A stretch of 64,000 nucleotides of DNA from Tetramitus jugosus. Lineage: Eukaryota; Protista; Heterolobosea. The notes under the pieces were generated by a model, which was given only the letters and a program-made list of their open reading frames with translations, made no database searches and was not told the DNA's origin. The stretch covers positions 124,001 through 188,000 of the forward strand of contig OW569365.1 of assembly GCA_937625935.1 (NCBI GenBank), written 5' to 3'. Shown here one piece after another: positions 14,084 to 26,050 of the stretch; position 1 is the first letter of the stretch; the number at the start of each line of letters is the position of its first letter. A program made the position numbers and the translations under genes.

Positions 14084-14575
14084 ATGAGAGCTATTACCCT
14101 TATCCTCCTCGTTGCTATTATTGTGTTCATTGGCCTTGCTGCCCTTGGTGATGCCTCCTCTCCTACTGAACCAAAGCTCAAGAAACAATCTCAACCAAGA
14201 AAGCTTGGTGCCTCCATCAGAAAGCTCGTAAAGCACTATGGTCCCGTGCTCGAACAAAAGGCAAAGAATTTGAACAAGAAGGTCAAGAAGGGTGTCTCCT
14301 TGTTGAAGAAGAGAAAGAACCATAACAACAAGATTGCTACCACTGCTACTGCTGCTGTTGGCGCACTTGCTGATTCCAATTTCTGGTTGACTCCTGGCAA
14401 GTACACTTGTTCTCAGTTGAACGTTCAAAACGGTATAGAGTGCACTCAGAGATGCATCAATCAATACAAGGGAAGACAAGTTCATCTCAAGTATTGGTTC
14501 GCTGCCTTCAATGATCCACCTGTTTGCAGAATTTGTTTGAAGCGTATTTGTAACTGCTGTGCCATTCCAATCTAA
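14084..14575 (+). CDS. Small secreted precursor: signal peptide, Lys-rich cationic segment, C-terminal 8-Cys domain (defensin/CS-alpha-beta-like spacing)
   Basis: Hydrophobic N-terminus; RKLGASIRKLVKHYG...KKVKKGVSLLKKRK; Cys pattern C-x10-C-x3-C-x23-C-x2-C-x4-C-x-CC; AATAAA ~55 nt after the stop. Confidence 0.8.
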   Translation: MRAITLILLVAIIVFIGLAALGDASSPTEPKLKKQSQPRKLGASIRKLVKHYGPVLEQKAKNLNKKVKKGVSLLKKRKNHNNKIATTATAAVGALADSNFWLTPGKYTCSQLNVQNGIECTQRCINQYKGRQVHLKYWFAAFNDPPVCRICLKRICNCCAIPI

Positions 14576-15851: not shown

Positions 15852-16862
15852 TCAAATTCTTGGTATCTGGAGCATACTTGGATGTAAAAGTCGAATAGAC
15901 ACCTTCTGAAGACCAATGACTGATATGGCAGGATAGTACACAATATCTCGTGTCGGAATGCCCGTGATAGTGTGAAAATACTCATTGTTCTTAAAGAGAT
16001 GCATGGACGCAGTACTGGAGTTATCACACAAGTTCTTCAAATCAAATTTCATCGCTATCGTGTCACCTGAACTAAACACAAAATTCTGCTCACCCAGAAC
16101 AGATCGAGAGGGATTCAGAGAACGGTTTATGGACACTGTATGTTCTCCCATGTTGTAACCCACACCTTCGCTGCAGCACCCTACAATCTTATCTCGCTCT
16201 TCTTTAGTAAACTCATATGTACTTCTCTCGATTCCGACAAATACTCGATAAGCATTGTAACCTCCATTGTCATGTTCATCCAGAGTGTATTCCCAACAAT
16301 GAACCCTTCCCAACTCAAGTTTTCTGTTGGTTCGGATCGTGTTCCACTTGTGCTTTTTCTCACATAATATTGTCTTGTTATTGTTGTGCATTGTAATGTC
16401 AGTGTCGGGTGTCCTTGTATCAGGTTCCCATTTCATCAAGTTCAATTGAACTCTATTTCTCCACAAGTTCTCCAGAGTTGAGTCTTCACTGACTGTTTCC
16501 ACATCCAAAGACAAGGTTGACAAATCTAATTGGTTCTCTTCAATCTCTTCTTTCTTCGACAGTAGTTCCTGTGCTGCAATGACAGCTTCTTCATCATCAA
16601 TGTTCAACCCGATTTGATTGGCCACCAATTTCCACAGATACCCATCGTTATCAGGGCTCAGCACCAAATATGCACCATGTTGACAACTCAATGACACGTG
16701 ATACAGGTCCTGCAGGCTCAAGAATGTTAAAATGTAGAGCTGCAGGTCACACGACAACAACTCAAAGATGTTGAGAGACAACTCTTCCTTTGTCAGAGAG
16801 ACCTCCAACTCTTCGCTCATTTTATCAGGAGTTACTTGAATCGGTTCTGAACTTTGTGCCAT
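15852..16862 (-). CDS. F-box + SPRY/B30.2 domain protein
   Basis: F-box FELLSCDLQLYILTFLSLQDLYHVSLSC. SPRY motifs RVHCWEY, VFVGI, GDTIAMKFDL, LFKNN and YYPAISV. Confidence 0.82.
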   Translation of the reverse strand: MAQSSEPIQVTPDKMSEELEVSLTKEELSLNIFELLSCDLQLYILTFLSLQDLYHVSLSCQHGAYLVLSPDNDGYLWKLVANQIGLNIDDEEAVIAAQELLSKKEEIEENQLDLSTLSLDVETVSEDSTLENLWRNRVQLNLMKWEPDTRTPDTDITMHNNNKTILCEKKHKWNTIRTNRKLELGRVHCWEYTLDEHDNGGYNAYRVFVGIERSTYEFTKEERDKIVGCCSEGVGYNMGEHTVSINRSLNPSRSVLGEQNFVFSSGDTIAMKFDLKNLCDNSSTASMHLFKNNEYFHTITGIPTRDIVYYPAISVIGLQKVSIRLLHPSMLQIPRI

Positions 16863-16963
16863 TTCTTTTGGTTGTTGTTTGACCAAAGAGTTCAGATAAT
16901 AAAGTTCTCCAATGTTCAATCGGAAGTCGGACATTGTAACAACTTTGATTCACAGGTATTTAT

Positions 16964-17554
16964 TTAGAATGCCTTTACAGCCTGGCACTTGTCTTGGTGG
17001 AAGGAAATGTGTTGTGTCAACAGGTTGAGCTTCAAAGTCAACAATCGAACATCCACATGCATATCAGCCATAAAGCAATTGTTTGGCACAGAAAACTTGA
17101 TATCGGAGAAATCGACACAAAGCTTGAGCACTTCAAAGAATGGATAACACACTTGAGCCAAATCTTCCAAGCTATATTCATGAGTATAGGTATACTTGTT
17201 ATCAACCGTCACTTGCAAAGTCAAAGCAAAGGCCTTGAGATCGACTTGTGCACTCACTGAAGCATCAAACTTGATGCGTTGGTGAACAAAACCGACATTG
17301 ACCTCCTGGTCCACATGAATCAAGCAAGTTTCATTCTTGGTGGCATCATCAAAGTGGCACTTGCCCTGAATTTCACCTAAACGAGCCAATTCATTGAGCA
17401 AAAATTTTCCAGTGTCCATTTGAGACATGGTAAGCAAGGAGGTTTTTTCCTCTTCAACAGCAGAGGTAGAGGCAGCATAGGTAGTAGTACGACCAGTAAA
17501 CAACAGCAAGGTAACTGCTGTGAGCAAGAGAGCAAGGATGACAGTGTGCTTCAT
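16964..17554 (-). CDS. Secreted beta-rich protein with 6 Cys (weak DUF4773-like resemblance)
   Basis: Signal peptide MKHTVILALLLTAVTLLLFTG at ATG 17554; alternating beta-strand pattern; VCYP...KLCVDF...NNCF. Confidence 0.7.
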   Translation of the reverse strand: MKHTVILALLLTAVTLLLFTGRTTTYAASTSAVEEEKTSLLTMSQMDTGKFLLNELARLGEIQGKCHFDDATKNETCLIHVDQEVNVGFVHQRIKFDASVSAQVDLKAFALTLQVTVDNKYTYTHEYSLEDLAQVCYPFFEVLKLCVDFSDIKFSVPNNCFMADMHVDVRLLTLKLNLLTQHISFHQDKCQAVKAF

Positions 17555-17753
17555 AATGGGAGTTCGTTGTACAACGTGTTTTTTCTGCGATACGGCGGAG
17601 AAACTTGTGTTTGAAAGGTTAATTTCATGGATGGACACTGATGTGTGAGATGATTTACAACCGTTGGGTCGGAATCGATGGATTTGTTGTTGTAACATCA
17701 GGGTTCTTTTGTAAGATTTGATCGAGGAGATCTCATTGTATTTTGACTGAGAA

Positions 17754-17774
17754 TTTGAAGGAAGGTCCTTCGAA
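17754..17774. promoter_or_regulatory. Palindromic upstream element of dynamin-like gene 1 (TTTGAAGGA-AGG-TCCTTCGAA)
   Basis: Near-perfect inverted repeat ending 68 bp before ATG 17843; the same motif precedes the two paralogs. Confidence 0.55.
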
Positions 17775-17842
17775 TTGTGTATTGAAAAGGGATTTCAATT
17801 TTTCAGAATACACTCCTCCAGACCACAAACTTCGCCTCCAAA

Positions 17843-19774
17843 ATGGACCTACCAAACGAAAACTTAGTTTCCATTCTCACCGATTGTAGAAAATTCTTGA
17901 CAGAAGAACAACAAAGAAAATTGAAATTGCCATCCATTGTTGTTGTTGGAGCTGAAAGCAATGGCAAGTCTTCTTTGCTTCAGAGAATCATTGGAATGGA
18001 ACTCCTTCCCACCGACATTCATGTGTGCACTCGATGTCCCATTGAAGTATCCATCTTGAACAATACTTCAATTGAGAAAAAATTCAAGTTGTCAATTACT
18101 GAGGTGCATGGAGAGGAGTATGAGCCCATTAAATTCGACAACGATTCAGAGTTCTTTGAGTGTGAAAATGTCCAAGATATCCGAGGTCAAGTCACTTCAA
18201 TCGTATCCATGTTGTCCAACAACAGAATTCAGGAAGGAAGAACACTTCAAGGAACAGGTTTCTCGAACGAACCAATCAAGATTCAAGTGGAATCATCATT
18301 GTTCAAAGAGAGTTTGTCCTTCACTGACCTTCCAGGATACAATAACAGCGAAAAGAAAGTCGAGAAGGCCTTGAAAGAGATTTACAACAAGGTTTTGTCT
18401 GAAGATAAGCACTCAATCGTTCTTTGGGTGCATCAAGCAACTTCTACTCATGGAAGTACAAGCATCAACAGCGAACGATTGTTTCACCTCCTTGGCGAGT
18501 CTTGGAATAATCGAGTTGTTGGTGTACTGACAAAGGTGGATGTAGAGGGTGCTACTGATATTGCCATTGATATGATGACAAAACAAGAGAACGGAATCAC
18601 CTGGTTTGCAGTCATGAACAAAGGTAATTCTCAGAGCGACTCTTTCGATGAAATTGAAGAGATCGAAAGAAGAATGCTTGAAGAAAAATTGAGTTCTCGT
18701 GTGGACAATGAACATCTTGGAATCTCATCTCTGAGGCACCACCTCTCTACAACATTAATTGAGAGAACCAGAGCACTTTTTCAAGGAAACAAGTTCAATC
18801 AATCGATTAAGAACATTCTGACAGAGTGTAACGACTTCTTGGAAAGTGAACCTGAGAAAACTCTCTTTGAACAGAGGTTCTACGAAATTATTGCTGAGTT
18901 GAGAGTAGATTTGAAAGAAGCGTTGTTGAATCCCTCGGATCTAGCTGACAAGCTGGATAATCCCTACGAAGATTTCTCTCTCTTCTTGAAATCTATCGAT
19001 CCATTTGGGAAAGAATCAGTTGATTCTTTCCTTAGAAGGTTTTCTAGAGATATGGCAAGATCTGGAGGCTTAGAAAGGAGTGTCTCTTCGAGTCAAAAAA
19101 TTCCGAGAGAATTTACCCAAAATGTCATAGGGGATATTAAGCTCCGTACTGATTCTTTTCTAGTCCAATTCTTTGGTGAAGCCATGGAAAATGTATCCCA
19201 ATTCATGGAGAAGAGTAGAGTTTTCAAAAGGGAAGATCAGAGATTTGTTGCTCTATTTTGTTCAAAGATGGGATATCAAGTTGAGAGCAACTATGCATTC
19301 AAGCGCTTCCTAAAGCTCAAAGATCAAGTCAATGATTTGTTCAGACACTCACAGTATCTATTCTTTCCACCTGACAGTAATTCTATCTTTGAAAGATATC
19401 AAGAAGCAATTATCAAACCATGGAAAGATAATAGTAGTGATGCCAACAACAGGGAAGTTTTGATCAGTGTCCTATCTTTGGTTCTCAACCACATAGGATC
19501 TTTCATATACTCTCTTATTTCCTACTTGCGGTGTGAAGTTCGGGGCATGTTTATTGATATCGTGGAAGATCTCTCGGGCTGCTACAAACCTTTCATAGCA
19601 GATCTGGCTGGCGTGTATAACAAGAAGAAGGAAGCAGTTTATGATGAATACCAACGGAAGAAACCTTCTATGAAGAAGAAAAAGGAAGACTTGGATGAAC
19701 TAATCAGAAAATACCCCTTTCTCTTCTTTCATCATTCCCAACCTGAAGACGCAGTCGCTGTTCTTGGTTTGTAA
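17843..19774 (+). CDS. Dynamin-superfamily (Mx/DRP-like) large GTPase, tandem copy 1 (643 aa, intronless)
   Basis: LPSIVVVGAESNGKSS (G1), CTRCP (G2), DLPG (G3), LTKVD (G4), WFAVMN, LGISSLR; helical stalk follows. Confidence 0.93.
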   Translation: MDLPNENLVSILTDCRKFLTEEQQRKLKLPSIVVVGAESNGKSSLLQRIIGMELLPTDIHVCTRCPIEVSILNNTSIEKKFKLSITEVHGEEYEPIKFDNDSEFFECENVQDIRGQVTSIVSMLSNNRIQEGRTLQGTGFSNEPIKIQVESSLFKESLSFTDLPGYNNSEKKVEKALKEIYNKVLSEDKHSIVLWVHQATSTHGSTSINSERLFHLLGESWNNRVVGVLTKVDVEGATDIAIDMMTKQENGITWFAVMNKGNSQSDSFDEIEEIERRMLEEKLSSRVDNEHLGISSLRHHLSTTLIERTRALFQGNKFNQSIKNILTECNDFLESEPEKTLFEQRFYEIIAELRVDLKEALLNPSDLADKLDNPYEDFSLFLKSIDPFGKESVDSFLRRFSRDMARSGGLERSVSSSQKIPREFTQNVIGDIKLRTDSFLVQFFGEAMENVSQFMEKSRVFKREDQRFVALFCSKMGYQVESNYAFKRFLKLKDQVNDLFRHSQYLFFPPDSNSIFERYQEAIIKPWKDNSSDANNREVLISVLSLVLNHIGSFIYSLISYLRCEVRGMFIDIVEDLSGCYKPFIADLAGVYNKKKEAVYDEYQRKKPSMKKKKEDLDELIRKYPFLFFHHSQPEDAVAVLGL

Positions 19775-20277
19775 AGTGACGAATCACTAAACCATTATTG
19801 TAAATAAATCGGTTTATCATCGGTGAATCAGCCTTACAATTGTGACAGTTTCTTAATCTTTCATCCCATGTTTCTGAAGGGAACCGTTTCAAAATACGAC
19901 ATCAGCCTCGATCTTCAACTGTTTGCATCTTCAGCTAAACTAGCCCAATGGTTATGCAGATTAATATTCAATGTTCTCTTTCAACCATTCAATCATTGAA
20001 AATATCTAGGAACTATCGCTTGAGGCCTGCTTTGCCGATGGGGATCACACTAACCCTATGCCAGAGAAGAATGGTCGTACCCACAACCGTTGATACCATC
20101 CATTCAAATTATGACAATCCACTAACAGAGGGAGGCACGCAAGGCTAAAATAAACACTACACTTTCTTTGGACTTCTTGGAAGATTCACCTAGTCGAGAA
20201 CATATCGGAGCATAGTTTCAATCAATGATCTTGTAGTTGATCACTGCCGTTTTTGGAGCATTGGACCATGACATTGA

Positions 20278-20294
20278 TTCGAGGTTCCTTCGAA
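20278..20294. promoter_or_regulatory. Palindromic upstream element of dynamin-like gene 2 (TTCGA-GGT-TCCTTCGAA, shortened left arm)
   Basis: The invariant right half-site TCCTTCGAA ends 87 bp before ATG 20382. Confidence 0.5.
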
Positions 20295-20381
20295 ATTTCA
20301 TATAAATTCTGGAGTTCATTGTTGACTCGGCAAAGGCACAACCACAGCAACATAGCACACCAACAACCACAACTTGCCACT

Positions 20382-22352
20382 ATGGACCTACAGAACGAAG
20401 ATTTAGTTTCAATCCTCACCGATTGTCGAAAGTACTTGACAGAAGAACAACAAAGACAATTGAAGTTACCATCCATTGTTGTTGTTGGAGCTGAAAGCAA
20501 TGGCAAGTCTTCTTTGCTTCAGAGAATCATTGGAATGGAGCTGCTCCCTACCAATGCACGTGTGTGCACTCGATGTCCCATTGAAGTATCCATCTTGAAC
20601 AATCCTTCTGTTGAGAACATGTTCAAGCTGTCGATTGTTGAGGTGAAAGGAGATGATCATGTGACCTACCAATTTGACAATGGATCAGAGTTCTTTGAAT
20701 GTGATCGAGTACAAGATATTCAAGATCAAGTAACTACAGTTGTCTCCAAGTTATCTGATAAAAGAATTCAAGAACGAAGAACCTCTCAAAATACTATTTT
20801 CTCTGGCGAACCGATCAAGATTCAAGTGGAGTCATCATTGTTCGAAGTGAGTTTGTCCTTCACTGACCTTCCAGGATACAATAACAGCGAAAAGAGAATC
20901 GAGAAGGCTTTGAAAGAGATTTACAACAAGGTTCTTTCAGAAGATAAGCACTCAATTGTTCTTTGGGTTCATCAAGCAACTTGCACTGACGGAAGCACAA
21001 GCATCAACAGGGAACGATTGAGACATCTTCTTGGCGAAACTTGGCACTCTAGAATAGTGGGAGTGTTGACAAAGGTGGACATGCCAGGGGCATCCGATAT
21101 TGCCATCGATATGATGAGTAATGAAGACAAGAATGACATAACATGGTTCGCGGTGGTAAACAAAGGTCATTCGCCTGACGACTCCTTCCCAGAAATTGAG
21201 AAAGAGGAAAGTAAGATATTGGAAGAAGTTCTGGGAGGACATGTGGACAGCGACTATCTCGGAATCTCCTCTTTGAGACAGCACCTCTCAGCAACATTAA
21301 TTGAGAAAACCAAAGTACTTTTTCAAGGAAACAAGTTCAATCAATCGATCAAGAGACTACTGAAAGAATGCAAGGAGTTCTTAACCAACAAGCCTGAGAA
21401 CATTCTGTTTGAGCACAAATTTTATGAGATCATTGGAGAACTCAAGGCAACATTGAATATTGAATTATTGAGTAACTCAGAACTAGCTGACAATTTGGAT
21501 CGCCCTCACAAAGAATTCTCTCTCTCTTTGAAACAAATTGACCCCTTAGGCGATGAAACTCTTGAATCGTTCTATGAAACTTTCAAAGAGGATAAGGAAC
21601 GTTCTGGAGGTTTAGAAAGGGGCGTTTCTTCCAGTCCCAAACTGCTTCGAGGTTTCACTCAGGGTGTACGAGAAGATATTCAGTTACTCTCAGAAAATTT
21701 TTTAGACCTTTTCTTTGAGAATGCCATGCAAAATCTCTCCAAAGTTATGGGCAATAGTCCAACATTGAGTAAGGAGGACAAAAAGTTTGTTGCCCTATTC
21801 ACTTCAAAACTTGGGTATCAGGGAGAAGAAAACTATGCCTTTCAACAATTTGAAAAACTCAAGGAGCAAGTTGATGATTTGTTCAAACGATCCGGGCATC
21901 TATTCTTCCCCTCTGAGAGCAATTCTATCTTTTCCAAGTACGAAGAAGAAATTATCGATCCCTTCACTGAAGAACTGGATTCTGAGAACTCGACAGATAG
22001 CCTGGCAAGCAGTATCGTTCGTTTGGGAGAGGAGACCAACGGAGAAGCATTCGCGACTGTCCTCTCGTTCGTTCTCAACCATTTAGCTTCGTTGATATAC
22101 TATCTCATTTCAACCTTGCGTTGTTATCTCTATGGAATGATCCTTGAAATTGTGGACAAGCTCGCAGAGTGTTATGCACCTTTCAAAGAAGAGTTGGCTG
22201 CAGTGTACGACAAGAAAAAGAAAGCTGCTTATGAAGACTTTCAGAAGAAGAAACCTTCAGTCCAAAAGAAAAAGGCTGATCTGGAAACATTGATCAAAAA
22301 GTACCCTGATCTCTTCCATCATTTTAGAACAAACGAAGATCAAAAACAGTAA
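20382..22352 (+). CDS. Dynamin-superfamily (Mx/DRP-like) large GTPase, tandem copy 2 (~656 aa, intronless)
   Basis: Same G1-G4 motifs. True start MDLQNEDL at 20382 by alignment to copies 1 and 3. Confidence 0.93.
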   Translation: MDLQNEDLVSILTDCRKYLTEEQQRQLKLPSIVVVGAESNGKSSLLQRIIGMELLPTNARVCTRCPIEVSILNNPSVENMFKLSIVEVKGDDHVTYQFDNGSEFFECDRVQDIQDQVTTVVSKLSDKRIQERRTSQNTIFSGEPIKIQVESSLFEVSLSFTDLPGYNNSEKRIEKALKEIYNKVLSEDKHSIVLWVHQATCTDGSTSINRERLRHLLGETWHSRIVGVLTKVDMPGASDIAIDMMSNEDKNDITWFAVVNKGHSPDDSFPEIEKEESKILEEVLGGHVDSDYLGISSLRQHLSATLIEKTKVLFQGNKFNQSIKRLLKECKEFLTNKPENILFEHKFYEIIGELKATLNIELLSNSELADNLDRPHKEFSLSLKQIDPLGDETLESFYETFKEDKERSGGLERGVSSSPKLLRGFTQGVREDIQLLSENFLDLFFENAMQNLSKVMGNSPTLSKEDKKFVALFTSKLGYQGEENYAFQQFEKLKEQVDDLFKRSGHLFFPSESNSIFSKYEEEIIDPFTEELDSENSTDSLASSIVRLGEETNGEAFATVLSFVLNHLASLIYYLISTLRCYLYGMILEIVDKLAECYAPFKEELAAVYDKKKKAAYEDFQKKKPSVQKKKADLETLIKKYPDLFHHFRTNEDQKQ

Positions 22353-22641
22353 GCTGCTAATTTCTACACACTCACAAACAGTAAAATATCATCATGAAGT
22401 AAAATTCTTGAAGAAATTCATTGAAGCTGTGTTCTCAAATTCTTCAAATCGAGTTCGAACTCCTTGTCTGTAAAGCGTTCAAGTTTCCTGTCAGTTCGAA
22501 TGTTTGATCTACTGTAATCTCGCACGACCAAAAAAATTACTGTCTCGGCCTCTTTCCAACACAAGGTCAAGTTCGTTGAATCAGGAAAGATAAATGAAGT
22601 AATATTTTGTCGGATGTCTCCGCAACGTACAGTATGATTGA

Positions 22642-22662
22642 TTCGAAGGAGTCTCCTTCGAA
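22642..22662. promoter_or_regulatory. Perfect palindromic upstream element of dynamin-like gene 3 (TTCGAAGGAG-T-CTCCTTCGAA)
   Basis: 10-bp perfect arms with a 1-nt spacer, ending 72 bp before ATG 22735. Confidence 0.6.
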
Positions 22663-22734
22663 ACACCAATTTAACTGGGTTCAACAATTTGAAAAGAAGA
22701 ATCACAACACAACAATCACACACGACTTGCCACT

Positions 22735-24693
22735 ATGGACCTACAGAACGAAGATTTAGTTTCCATCCTCACCGATTGTCGAAAGTACTTGACAGAAGAA
22801 CAACAAAGACAATTGAAGTTACCATCCATTGTTGTTGTTGGAGCTGAAAGCAATGGCAAGTCTTCTTTGCTTCAGAGAATCATTGGAATGGAGCTGCTCC
22901 CTACCAATGCACGTGTGTGCACTCGATGTCCCATTGAAGTATCCATCTTGAACAATCCTTCTGTTGAGAACATGTTCAAGTTGTCGATTGTTGAGGTGAA
23001 AGGAGAAGGCTATGAGACGTTCAAGTTTGAAAATGGATCAGAATTCTTTGAGTGTGAAAGTGTTGAAGATATTCGAGGTCAAGTCACTTCAATCGTATCC
23101 ATGTTGTCCAACAACAGAATTCAGGAAGGAAGAACACTTTATGGAACTGATTTTTCTGAAGAGCCAATCAAGATTCAAGTGGAATCATCTTTTTTCGAAG
23201 TGAGCTTGTCCTTCACTGATCTTCCTGGATATAACAACAGCGAGGTATCCAAAGAGAAGGCGTTAAAAACCATTTACAGTAAGGTTCTTTCCGAAGATCA
23301 GCATTCCATTGTTCTTTGGGTCCATCAAGCGACCTGTACTGATGGTAGTACAAGTATCAACAGAGAAAAGTTGAAGCAACTTCTTGGTGAGACTTGGAGT
23401 TCTAGAATTGTGGGAGTTTTAACCAAAGTTGACATGCCAGATGCGTCTGAGATTGCCATCGATATGATGACAAACGAAGACAAGAATGAAATTACATGGT
23501 TTGCGGTTATGAACAAAGGTCAATCCTATGATGACTCCTTCCAAGAAATTGAAGAAAACGAGGATAGAGTGTTGAAGAAAGTGTTGGGTGACCATGTGAA
23601 CGGTGACTTCCTCGGTATTTCCTCTTTGAGACAGCACCTCTCAACAACATTGATCGAGAAAACCAAAGCTCTCTTTCAAGGGAACAAGTTCAATCAATCC
23701 ATCAAGAGAATTTTGAAGGAATGTAACGATTTCTTGGCCAATGAACCAGAGAATGCTTCCTTTGAACAAAAATTCTATGAAATTGTTTCAGAATTGAGGA
23801 CTGATTTGAAGAATGAATTACTAAGCAATTCTGAACTAGCTCGAAACTTGGATGCTCCTCACAAGAAGTTCACCGAATCCTTGAAACTCATGGATCCATT
23901 AGGAGCGGAATCCTTGGATGACCTGTATACAAGGTTCAAGAAAGATATTGAATTCTCAGGAGGATTAGAGAGAGGTGTTTCTTCAAGCCCAAAGCTTCTT
24001 CGAAACCTCACCCAAGGCGTAAGAGACGACATCATCATTCGTACAGACAATTTTCTGGATTCTTTCTTTGAAAACACCTGTAGGAATCTCTCCAACTTCA
24101 TGGGGAACAGTCGAGCATTGAACAAAGAAGACAAGAAGTTTGTTGCCCTATTTGTATCGAAACTTGGACTTCGTGTGGATGGTAGTTACGCTTATCAACG
24201 CTTCACCAAACTAAAAGATCAGGTAAGTGACTTGTTCAAATACTCTGAACATCTACTTTTCCCACCTGAGAGCAATTCGATCTTTGTTGGATTTGAAGAC
24301 CGAATTATCAAACCATTTAACGACGGATTGGATCCAGAAAAACTTGCGACTTACACTCCCGCCAACACCTTTGGCAGAAAAGTTTTCAAACTTGGGGAGA
24401 AGAGTCAAGGAGAAGCGTTTATCAATGTTCTCTCATTCGTTCTCAACCATCTTAGTTCGCTCATCTACTATCTGATTTCAACCTTGCGTTGTTATCTTCA
24501 TGGAATGACCCTTGAAATTGTGGACAAGCTCGCGAATTGCTATGCACCTCTCAAAGAAGAGTTAGCTGCAGTGTACGACAAGAAGAAGAAGGCAGTGTAT
24601 GATGATTACCATAAGAAGAAACCTTTTGTTGTGAAGAAAAAAGCAGATCTAGAGACCCTAACCAACAAGTACCCTGATCTCTTTTTCCATTAG
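22735..24693 (+). CDS. Dynamin-superfamily (Mx/DRP-like) large GTPase, tandem copy 3 (652 aa, intronless)
   Basis: Same G1-G4 motifs; paralog of copies 1 and 2. Confidence 0.93.
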   Translation: MDLQNEDLVSILTDCRKYLTEEQQRQLKLPSIVVVGAESNGKSSLLQRIIGMELLPTNARVCTRCPIEVSILNNPSVENMFKLSIVEVKGEGYETFKFENGSEFFECESVEDIRGQVTSIVSMLSNNRIQEGRTLYGTDFSEEPIKIQVESSFFEVSLSFTDLPGYNNSEVSKEKALKTIYSKVLSEDQHSIVLWVHQATCTDGSTSINREKLKQLLGETWSSRIVGVLTKVDMPDASEIAIDMMTNEDKNEITWFAVMNKGQSYDDSFQEIEENEDRVLKKVLGDHVNGDFLGISSLRQHLSTTLIEKTKALFQGNKFNQSIKRILKECNDFLANEPENASFEQKFYEIVSELRTDLKNELLSNSELARNLDAPHKKFTESLKLMDPLGAESLDDLYTRFKKDIEFSGGLERGVSSSPKLLRNLTQGVRDDIIIRTDNFLDSFFENTCRNLSNFMGNSRALNKEDKKFVALFVSKLGLRVDGSYAYQRFTKLKDQVSDLFKYSEHLLFPPESNSIFVGFEDRIIKPFNDGLDPEKLATYTPANTFGRKVFKLGEKSQGEAFINVLSFVLNHLSSLIYYLISTLRCYLHGMTLEIVDKLANCYAPLKEELAAVYDKKKKAVYDDYHKKKPFVVKKKADLETLTNKYPDLFFH

Positions 24694-24918
24694 TAAAACT
24701 TGTTTTTGGATATAGAGATTCGCGCTTTATTCAACCAATTCACCAAATCAAGCACTACTCTCAATCACTAGATATAGTACAAGGAAGAGTCTGTAGGTAA
24801 ACACAACACACAACACGGGCAAAGCAACAATATGCAGCATCCTAATCATGTATGCATCATCAATGACTCATTCAACCATTTTCCACATAATTCATCATCA
24901 TCATTAGCAGACACAGAC

Positions 24919-26050
24919 TCACTTGTTCGCCACTTGTACCTGAATCGTATGGTCATAGTCAATCGTTGGTATGACAGCACTAATGACCTTCAAGAAGATG
25001 TAGAGATATAAATCAACGCGAACATATCTACCTTCTTCACTCATCCGATCCACCATCTTCTTCATGACATCAGCGTGCTTACATGGATGAATCGAAGCAT
25101 GTGCAGTCGAAAGATGCGGATGCTGTTCAATCGTTACAGTCTTATTCGAATAATCCGTATGAATATCCTCCAAAATCTTTTGAGTGCTCAACGGTTGTCC
25201 ATTCTCATCATATCCAAACAACCACACTCTCGGAGTTTGATAATACTTGTCATACGTAATACTGATATCATATGTTCTCGTTCGCAATATTCCATCGTCC
25301 TCCTCCTCTTCTTCTTCTTTCTCTTCGTCTTTGCTCTGAGCAACAAAAGCACTCGCATTTGGTTTGACAACCAGTGTATCATCATCTTCATCGTCCTGCA
25401 AATCCTGAGCATTGTAATCATCGATATCAATGGCGTCTTCATCATCATCATCATCATCGTCGTCGTCATCGTCATGATTGTGAGCACCTCCAAAATAGGC
25501 ATTATTAATGTTATTGGTCTGATTGTTAATGATTTGGACAGACGATTGAACTTTGCTTGAAATTTCATCAATTTCATCAATTTCGTCATCATTTCTGTTC
25601 AATTTGTTGCCTTGAGAATGAATGTGAGTAGCTACCCAGTCATCACCATCTTCATTCAACACTTGTTCATCATCAACGTCCTCCTTTAATGATTTTGCTC
25701 TTCGCACACAAGGCACTGCAAATTGTGTGTTGTTGTGTCAATATCACAGACATTTGCTTTACAATAGGAAAAATAAAAAGAGCGCGAGCGCTCGTGCAAA
25801 AAAAAACACGCACAACACACTTACCATTTCTCGTAATGAGGAATTGCTTGTCAGGAGGCAAATAATCTTTTCTTTTGGATGGTTCTCCACCGCTCCATGC
25901 CCATGTTGCACACCTCTCTGTAATCAAATCACCTGCCTTGACAAACTCTTCTGGTGTCAATTTTCCTTGATCATAAAAATGAGATTCCTTGGGAACGGCA
26001 ATAAAATATTCTGCAACGCCTTTCCAGACGTTAAACATTGCATAACTCAT
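24919..26050 (-). CDS. ATG3: Autophagy E2-like conjugating enzyme ATG3; intron 25716..25824
   Basis: [26 protein letters not shown] (after splicing), acidic flexible region, [20 protein letters not shown], catalytic [16 protein letters not shown]. Confidence 0.96.

What the first reader, a model, noticed from the sequence alone, without database searches (positions are those of the whole stretch)
17754..24693. Tandem array of three Mx/dynamin-like GTPases with hallmarks of an inducible, diversifying defence locus
Seen: three intronless, same-strand paralogs of ~650 aa with a non-canonical G1 (GAESNGKSS instead of GxQSxGKSS). They have no PH/PRD domain and no TM segment, a highly conserved GTPase N-terminus, divergent stalks and a shared upstream palindrome. 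Known: housekeeping dynamins (Drp1/Vps1) are usually low-copy and conserved, whereas antiviral Mx proteins form tandem arrays and diversify. Inference: this may be an undescribed protist Mx-like restriction system, for example against giant viruses or intracellular bacteria.
Basis: partly seen in the sequence, partly recalled or inferred. Interest (0 to 1): 0.85.

Follow-up and report, generated by a model that had tools for sequence, protein, structure and literature searches.

The report
Amoeba Mx-like dynamin array, Dicer-linked promoter
A soil amoeba carries three side-by-side copies of a previously undescribed dynamin-family GTPase that branches next to the antiviral Mx proteins, varies between alleles at the same tip loop Mx uses to recognise viruses, and shares a rare promoter motif with the RNA-silencing enzyme Dicer, so it probably serves defence, though no infection data exist yet.

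Summary
The array is real: three intact, intronless dynamin-superfamily genes (643, 656, 652 aa), probably in Tetramitus jugosus. They fold as GTPase + BSE + four-helix stalk with no PH domain. They are not Drp1/Vps1 (AU p 0.017-0.036) and not inside the Mx clade. They form a separate lineage with Willaertia and Acrasis relatives on the Mx side of the tree, in a genome lacking a true MxF orthologue. For defence: alleles differ almost only in the MxA-L4-equivalent loop (8 nonsynonymous/0 synonymous, versus 3/11 elsewhere); G1 carries the natural equivalent of dynamin's fission-dead Q40E; five copies on three chromosomes, one broken; the palindrome has four exact sites genome-wide, one 87 nt before Dicer. 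Best reading: Mx-like restriction scaffold (0.55).

The parts
17755..17773 (.). Palindromic promoter-like element (GAAGGA-3nt-TCCTTC core), 87 nt upstream of the g1 ATG
17843..19774 (+). Dynamin-superfamily gene 1, 643 aa; stalk-tip loop about 21 aa shorter than in g3; His at the D180-equivalent position
20278..20294 (.). Degenerate half copy of the palindrome upstream of g2
20382..22352 (+). Dynamin-superfamily gene 2, 656 aa
20382..20639 (+). Gene-conversion tract shared with g3 (codons 1-86, dS 0.035)
22642..22662 (.). Perfect palindrome (9-nt arms, 3-nt spacer), 91 nt upstream of the g3 ATG by the core motif
22735..24693 (+). Dynamin-superfamily gene 3, 652 aa; G domain + BSE + four-helix stalk; present in RNA contigs
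22840..22866 (+). G1/P-loop of g3 (G36-S44); E38 corresponds to dynamin-1 Q40
24328..24402 (+). Stalk-tip insertion (aa 532-556) at the place of MxA loop L4; allelic hot spot at codons 537-545 (24343-24369)

Best explanation
A heterolobosean lineage of soluble dynamin-superfamily GTPases, related to but distinct from Mx, that works like Mx as an intracellular restriction factor. Shown or modelled: a G domain with GTP-binding residues, a BSE hinge and a stalk; no lipid-binding PH or TM part; a variable loop at the stalk tip. Inferred mechanism: the proteins oligomerise through the stalk into rings or filaments, present the tip loop multivalently to a pathogen structure (viral nucleoprotein, capsid or factory membrane, less likely a bacterial vacuole) and trap or coat it. 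The Q40-to-E change in G1, plus S41-to-N and loss of the D180 equivalent in some paralogues, probably uncouples assembly from fast GTP hydrolysis, so they act as persistent scaffolds rather than fission machines. Paralogues and alleles with different loops would widen specificity. A shared palindromic element probably co-regulates g1 and g3 with Dicer.
For: Tree position on the Mx side, with Dyn/Drp grouping rejected. No MxF orthologue in this genome, whereas Acrasis and Percolomonas have Mx-clade proteins. Copy turnover: three tandem, one dispersed, one frame-broken copy. Allele P0001 versus g3: loop 8 nonsynonymous/0 synonymous, rest 3/11, Fisher p 0.001. At least three loop haplotypes in public runs. 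Alleles of a related species' orthologue have pN/pS 0.75 with patchy radical changes. The loop lies between stalk helices 515-531 and 556-597; L4 sets MxA specificity (PMC12047444). Q40E abolishes assembly-stimulated hydrolysis and fission but not assembly in dynamin-1 (PMC3561337); hydrolysis is dispensable for MX2 restriction (PMC10986937). The palindrome's four exact sites lie before g1, g3, Dicer and a kelch gene.
Against: No infection or induction data. Paralogue dN/dS is 0.16-0.26. The insertion site at the stalk tip is variable in all dynamins (own knowledge), so loop variation is not Mx-specific, and the allele test rests on one full allele. Best sequence and fold matches are Drp1/Vps1/Mgm1, with MxA tied or lower. 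Long branches could pull the family towards Mx; with more long rows its place was unresolved. The motif is absent, at up to one mismatch, near Piwi, RdRP, TIR and the other RNase III genes, and also precedes kelch genes. Willaertia and Acrasis relatives are single-copy at their loci and keep Q in G1. Neighbouring genes are mostly housekeeping (ATG3, cytidylyltransferase-like).
Confidence: 0.55

Rival explanations
1. Lineage-specific membrane or cytoskeletal scaffolds for a life-cycle step (encystment, amoeba-flagellate change, cytokinesis, nuclear envelope), like the lineage-specific DRP expansions of other protists; the palindrome is a developmental or stress element.
For: Purifying selection across paralogues; g3 found in RNA contigs from unrelated samples; single-copy relatives kept in Willaertia and Acrasis; motif also before kelch genes; Q40E dynamin still tubulates membranes.
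Against: It does not predict all-nonsynonymous allelic change at one loop, a broken copy, or a shared element with Dicer. There is no membrane anchor or clear targeting sequence (net negative N-terminus).
Confidence: 0.28
2. They are true Mx orthologues, a fast-evolving fourth Mx lineage pushed outside the clade by long branches; the function is as in the best explanation but the membership differs.
For: Sister to Mx at 95/89 in one tree; an exclusive family+Mx clade is not rejected (p 0.197); CTRCP switch-I motif shared with MxF; canonical MxF is missing here.
Against: The Mx clade is recovered without them at 100/94 and 99/97; grouping with the MxF1 core is rejected (p 0.017); Acrasis holds both this family and true MxF-like proteins; no Dynamin_M or GED Pfam hit, unlike MxF; CTRCP also occurs in Dyn/Drp-clade rows.
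Confidence: 0.2
3. Nearly neutral birth-and-death duplicates with a relaxed, disordered loop; the motif shared with Dicer is coincidence.
For: Gene conversion and a broken copy show ordinary tandem dynamics; loose versions of the motif are mostly inside coding sequence.
Against: dS near 1 with dN/dS 0.2 shows long retention under selection; eight substitutions without a silent change within 9 codons; all four exact sites lie 87-124 nt before a start codon.
Confidence: 0.1

Closest known systems
Mx proteins (animal MxA/MxB, fungal MxF, plant DRP4; Langley et al. 2025, PMC11789081)
   Same: G domain-BSE-stalk with no PH or TM, about 650 aa, variable stalk-tip loop, copy-number turnover, same side of the tree
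   Different: Outside the Mx clade; G1 has E for Q; no Dynamin_M or GED Pfam match; induction and antiviral activity not shown; that study reports no Mx-like protein from Discoba in the section read
Drp1/Vps1/dynamin (class A fission dynamins)
   Same: Best sequence and fold matches (Drp1 4bej, E 1e-17, Z 29.4); same overall fold
   Different: Grouping rejected; 16-24% identity; catalytic Q40 equivalent replaced; the genome has a separate canonical Drp
MADS/group D, MidX and PADS dynamins shared with giant viruses (PMC10280142, PMC11789081)
   Same: Divergent non-canonical dynamin lineages of protists and viruses
   Different: Viral contig hits are only 24-28% identical over the G domain, and the one placed in the tree (L032) falls in a separate clade; no N-terminal presequence; PADS itself was not represented by a named sequence

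Membership tests
Dynamin superfamily | Dynamin-type G domain with G1-G4 motifs | tested here: met
   PF00350 at 65-70 bits, cut-off 27; K42, S43, T63, D162, K231, D233 invariant
Dynamin superfamily | BSE plus four-helix stalk | tested here: met
   AF2 pLDDT 87 and 83 (the second with family rows only); 531-545 residues align to Drp1, MxA and MxB
Mx clade | G domain nests within the Mx/MxF/DRP4 clade | tested here: not met
   Mx clade recovered without the family; grouping with the MxF1 core rejected; sister position not rejected.
Mx clade | No PH, PRD or TM domain | tested here: met
Mx clade | Rapidly evolving stalk-tip loop L4 | tested here: inconclusive
   Strong nonsynonymous excess in one full allele pair and several haplotypes, but too few alleles for a site model
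Mx clade | Induced by infection signalling | not testable with these tools
   Only contigs from uncontrolled RNA runs
Mx clade | Restricts virus replication | not testable with these tools
   Needs experiment
Drp1/Vps1/dynamin (class A) | Groups with Dyn/Drp | tested here: not met
   AU p 0.036 and 0.017
Drp1/Vps1/dynamin (class A) | GxQSxGKS with Q40/S41/D180 for assembly-stimulated hydrolysis | tested here: not met
   E at the Q40 position in all five G000 copies; Q in 278 of 296 collected proteins; role of Q40 from PMC3561337
MADS / MidX / Mgm1 | Groups with these clades | tested here: not met
   They form separate fully supported clades; these groups were labelled by similarity, not by named references
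PADS | Groups with PADS | not tested
   No named PADS sequence was retrieved

The most novel reading that the evidence does not exclude
A discoban amoeba has a small inducible antiviral regulon: one transcription-factor site switches on Dicer, a tandem 3'-5' exonuclease and a fission-dead, Mx-sister dynamin whose stalk-tip loop is under balancing selection against viruses. This would be an interferon-like coupling of RNAi and Mx-type restriction in a unicellular eukaryote.
Probability: 0.25. Interest if true: 0.88.

Novelty: new variant of a known kind. Interest (0 to 1): 0.62.

Why it matters
Whether Mx-like dynamins outside animals are antiviral is an open question (PMC11789081, Discussion). 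This locus gives a testable case in Discoba: a distinct Mx-side lineage, natural loop alleles to swap, a natural Q40E-type active site, and a candidate cis-element shared with Dicer that could lead to an unknown amoebal immune transcription factor. Even if it is not defensive, it is an undescribed dynamin subfamily with an unusual catalytic site.

Tried and rejected
Viral origin: two viral-contig scans gave only distant G-domain hits. More alleles: the metagenome scan returned only the contig already known, and the window proteins are not in the cluster collection. No Naegleria member appeared in three searches, but these searches are limited. Heat-shock or STAT/GAS element: the GAA...TTC spacing of the palindrome fits neither (sequence inspection, own knowledge). 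A genome-wide antiviral regulon: no site at up to one mismatch near Piwi, RdRP, TIR or the other RNase III genes; the fifth exact site of the shorter pattern is inside a ribosomal-protein S27-like coding exon; 8 of 10 loose sites read were in ORFs. The full palindrome is not conserved upstream of the C37 and C21 copies or of the Willaertia and Acrasis relatives. P0005, named VPS1 by its source, groups with MxF-type proteins and was not used as a Vps1 reference.
Full report
Source. The genome has 26,350,207 bases in 56 contigs and the window has about 41% GC. This matches the Tetramitus jugosus CCAP 1588/3C assembly, 26.3 Mb in 55 scaffolds plus a mitochondrion (PMC11106597). The closest named relatives of the proteins come from Willaertia and Acrasis. 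The identification is an inference.

Observation. Three uninterrupted same-strand ORFs lie at 17843-19774, 20382-22352 and 22735-24693. They are 65-75% identical and share G1 GAESNGKSS. Pfam finds only Dynamin_N above threshold among dynamin domains. AlphaFold gives a G domain, a BSE and a four-helix stalk at pLDDT 87 with a mixed alignment and 83 with family rows only. The model aligns over 530-545 residues with Drp1, MxA and MxB, which are close in score. There is no PH domain, and the most hydrophobic window is a stalk helix. The genome holds two further copies: an intact one on C37 (41% identical) and a frame-broken one on C21. It also has a canonical intron-containing Drp on C40 and DRP5-like genes.

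Family and position. A profile search of 1.84 billion representatives found only 11 proteins below 1e-30, mostly unnamed environmental proteins plus Willaertia magna and Acrasis kona. In G-domain trees (LG+C20) the family is one clade (100/98 and 96/99). It lies on the Mx side of a branch at 93/90 and 97/96, but outside the Mx clade (100/94 and 99/97). AU tests reject grouping with Dyn/Drp (p 0.036 and 0.017) and with the MxF1 core (p 0.017), and do not reject a sister position to Mx (p 0.197). With more long branches the position was open, so long-branch attraction remains a risk. The Mx rows were fungal, algal and protist proteins; one was anchored by its best PDB hit to MxA. Acrasis has both this family and true MxF-like proteins, while this genome has no MxF orthologue.

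Selection. Between paralogues dN/dS is 0.16-0.26 overall and no higher in the stalk than in the G domain. g2 and g3 share a converted tract over codons 1-86. Alleles tell a different story. An environmental allele of g3 (P0001, 98% identical) has 11-12 silent changes spread over the gene and three conservative replacements outside the loop. It has eight nonsynonymous substitutions and a two-codon insertion within codons 537-545, and no silent change there (Fisher p 0.001). This patch lies between stalk helices 515-531 and 556-597, where MxA has its specificity loop L4 (PMC12047444; the structural equivalence is my reading of the model). Paralogues differ there by 5-21 residue indels. Contigs from four public runs show at least three haplotypes at 24346-24360. 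In run X7 the g2 contigs match the reference exactly while the g3 contig differs at 127 of 1,647 bases. Two alleles of an orthologue from another species show pN/pS 0.75 in patches, though one of those contigs has a frameshift and may hold errors. The caveat is that this loop is variable in all dynamins and only one full allele was compared.

Active site. E38 aligns with dynamin-1 Q40, a position that is Q in 278 of 296 collected proteins. In dynamin-1, Q40E keeps assembly and tubulation but loses assembly-stimulated hydrolysis and fission; S41N and D180N act in the same network (PMC3561337). The C37 copy and two relatives carry both E and N in G1, and g1, C37 and P0003 lack the D180-equivalent aspartate. 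Willaertia and Acrasis relatives keep Q. I infer that this sub-lineage gave up fission and works as a scaffold; compensating changes cannot be excluded. MX2 restricts without hydrolysis (PMC10986937).

Palindrome. A pattern built from g1 and g3 alone found five other sites genome-wide, against none for the control. Three lie before start codons: a Dicer with DEAD helicase, dimerisation, PAZ, two RNase III and dsRBD domains (87 nt upstream, the same offset as g1, with two extra half-sites); a gene with two 3'-5' exonuclease domains followed by an AAA ORF (118 nt); and a kelch gene (124 nt). A symmetric pattern, partly built from these sites, has four exact matches: g1, g3, Dicer and kelch. A second probable kelch gene has a one-mismatch site. 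The orthologue of a related species has three half-sites in its 362-nt upstream region (shuffle p 0.012). The element is probably a transcription-factor site with few targets. It does not mark Piwi, RdRP, TIR or other RNase III genes, so a general immune regulon is not shown.

Expression. Eight runs on record as RNA hold part of the stretch. g3 is covered in a soil metatranscriptome, an oligo-dT run and a run of the organism itself that looks like RNA (contigs over the genes, none over two intergenic bins); g2 is covered fully only in the last. Contigs show presence, not level, and none is an infection experiment. 'Inducible' is neither shown nor refuted.

Verdict. The array is a real, undescribed dynamin subfamily. 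It works most likely as an Mx-like restriction scaffold (0.55), but it fails the test for Mx membership. A life-cycle scaffold role is the main rival (0.28). Novelty: new variant of a known kind. Interest 0.62; 0.88 if the Dicer-coupled regulon proves true (probability 0.25). Spliced models were searched by piece and not joined.

Noticed in passing
L061:3919-7742 (G000 C4, about 564.4-568.2 kb, minus strand): Full-architecture Dicer (DEAD helicase, Dicer_dimer, PAZ, two RNase III, dsRBD) in two ORFs, with the palindrome and two extra half-sites in its promoter
   Followed up: partly
L062:1325-4220 (G000 C39, minus strand): Gene with two PF01612 3'-5' exonuclease domains followed by a SpoIIIAA-type AAA ORF; resembles EXD1/Egalitarian by recollection only; one-mismatch palindrome 118 nt upstream
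   Followed up: partly
L008:793-3087 (G000 C20, 16.4-18.7 kb): Subtelomeric 764-aa dynamin-like ORF with a 240-aa N-terminal extension and degenerate G1 (GQRKSGKS) and switch I; its best match among my reference proteins is the Willaertia family member, weakly
   Followed up: partly
G000 C17 507-525 kb: A divergent dynamin-like gene lies within 18 kb of two TIR_2 genes near the chromosome end
   Followed up: no
G000 C20:8166, C37:6937, C49:312077: Three sites share the same 16-nt core as the Dicer promoter motif, two of them near contig starts; not read
   Followed up: no
L005:1498-3458 (G000 C21): Fifth family copy, split by a frame break after about residue 190
   Followed up: partly
window 14084-14575 +: 163-aa secreted-looking protein with a cationic stretch and a cysteine-rich C-terminus; no Pfam match above threshold
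   Followed up: no
window 24919-26050 -: ATG3 (autophagy E2), split by an intron, directly downstream of g3
   Followed up: partly
window 15852-17698 -: F-box-like/SPRY-like ORF and a DUF4773 secreted protein transcribed away from g1; the g1 palindrome could also serve this divergent promoter
   Followed up: no
P0096, P0192, P0028: Acrasis kona and Percolomonas proteins fall inside the Mx clade, extending Mx-like proteins to Discoba
   Followed up: partly
run X7, window 23194-24836: g3-type contig only 92% identical to the reference while g2 contigs are identical: a deep second allele or an unassembled paralogue
   Followed up: no
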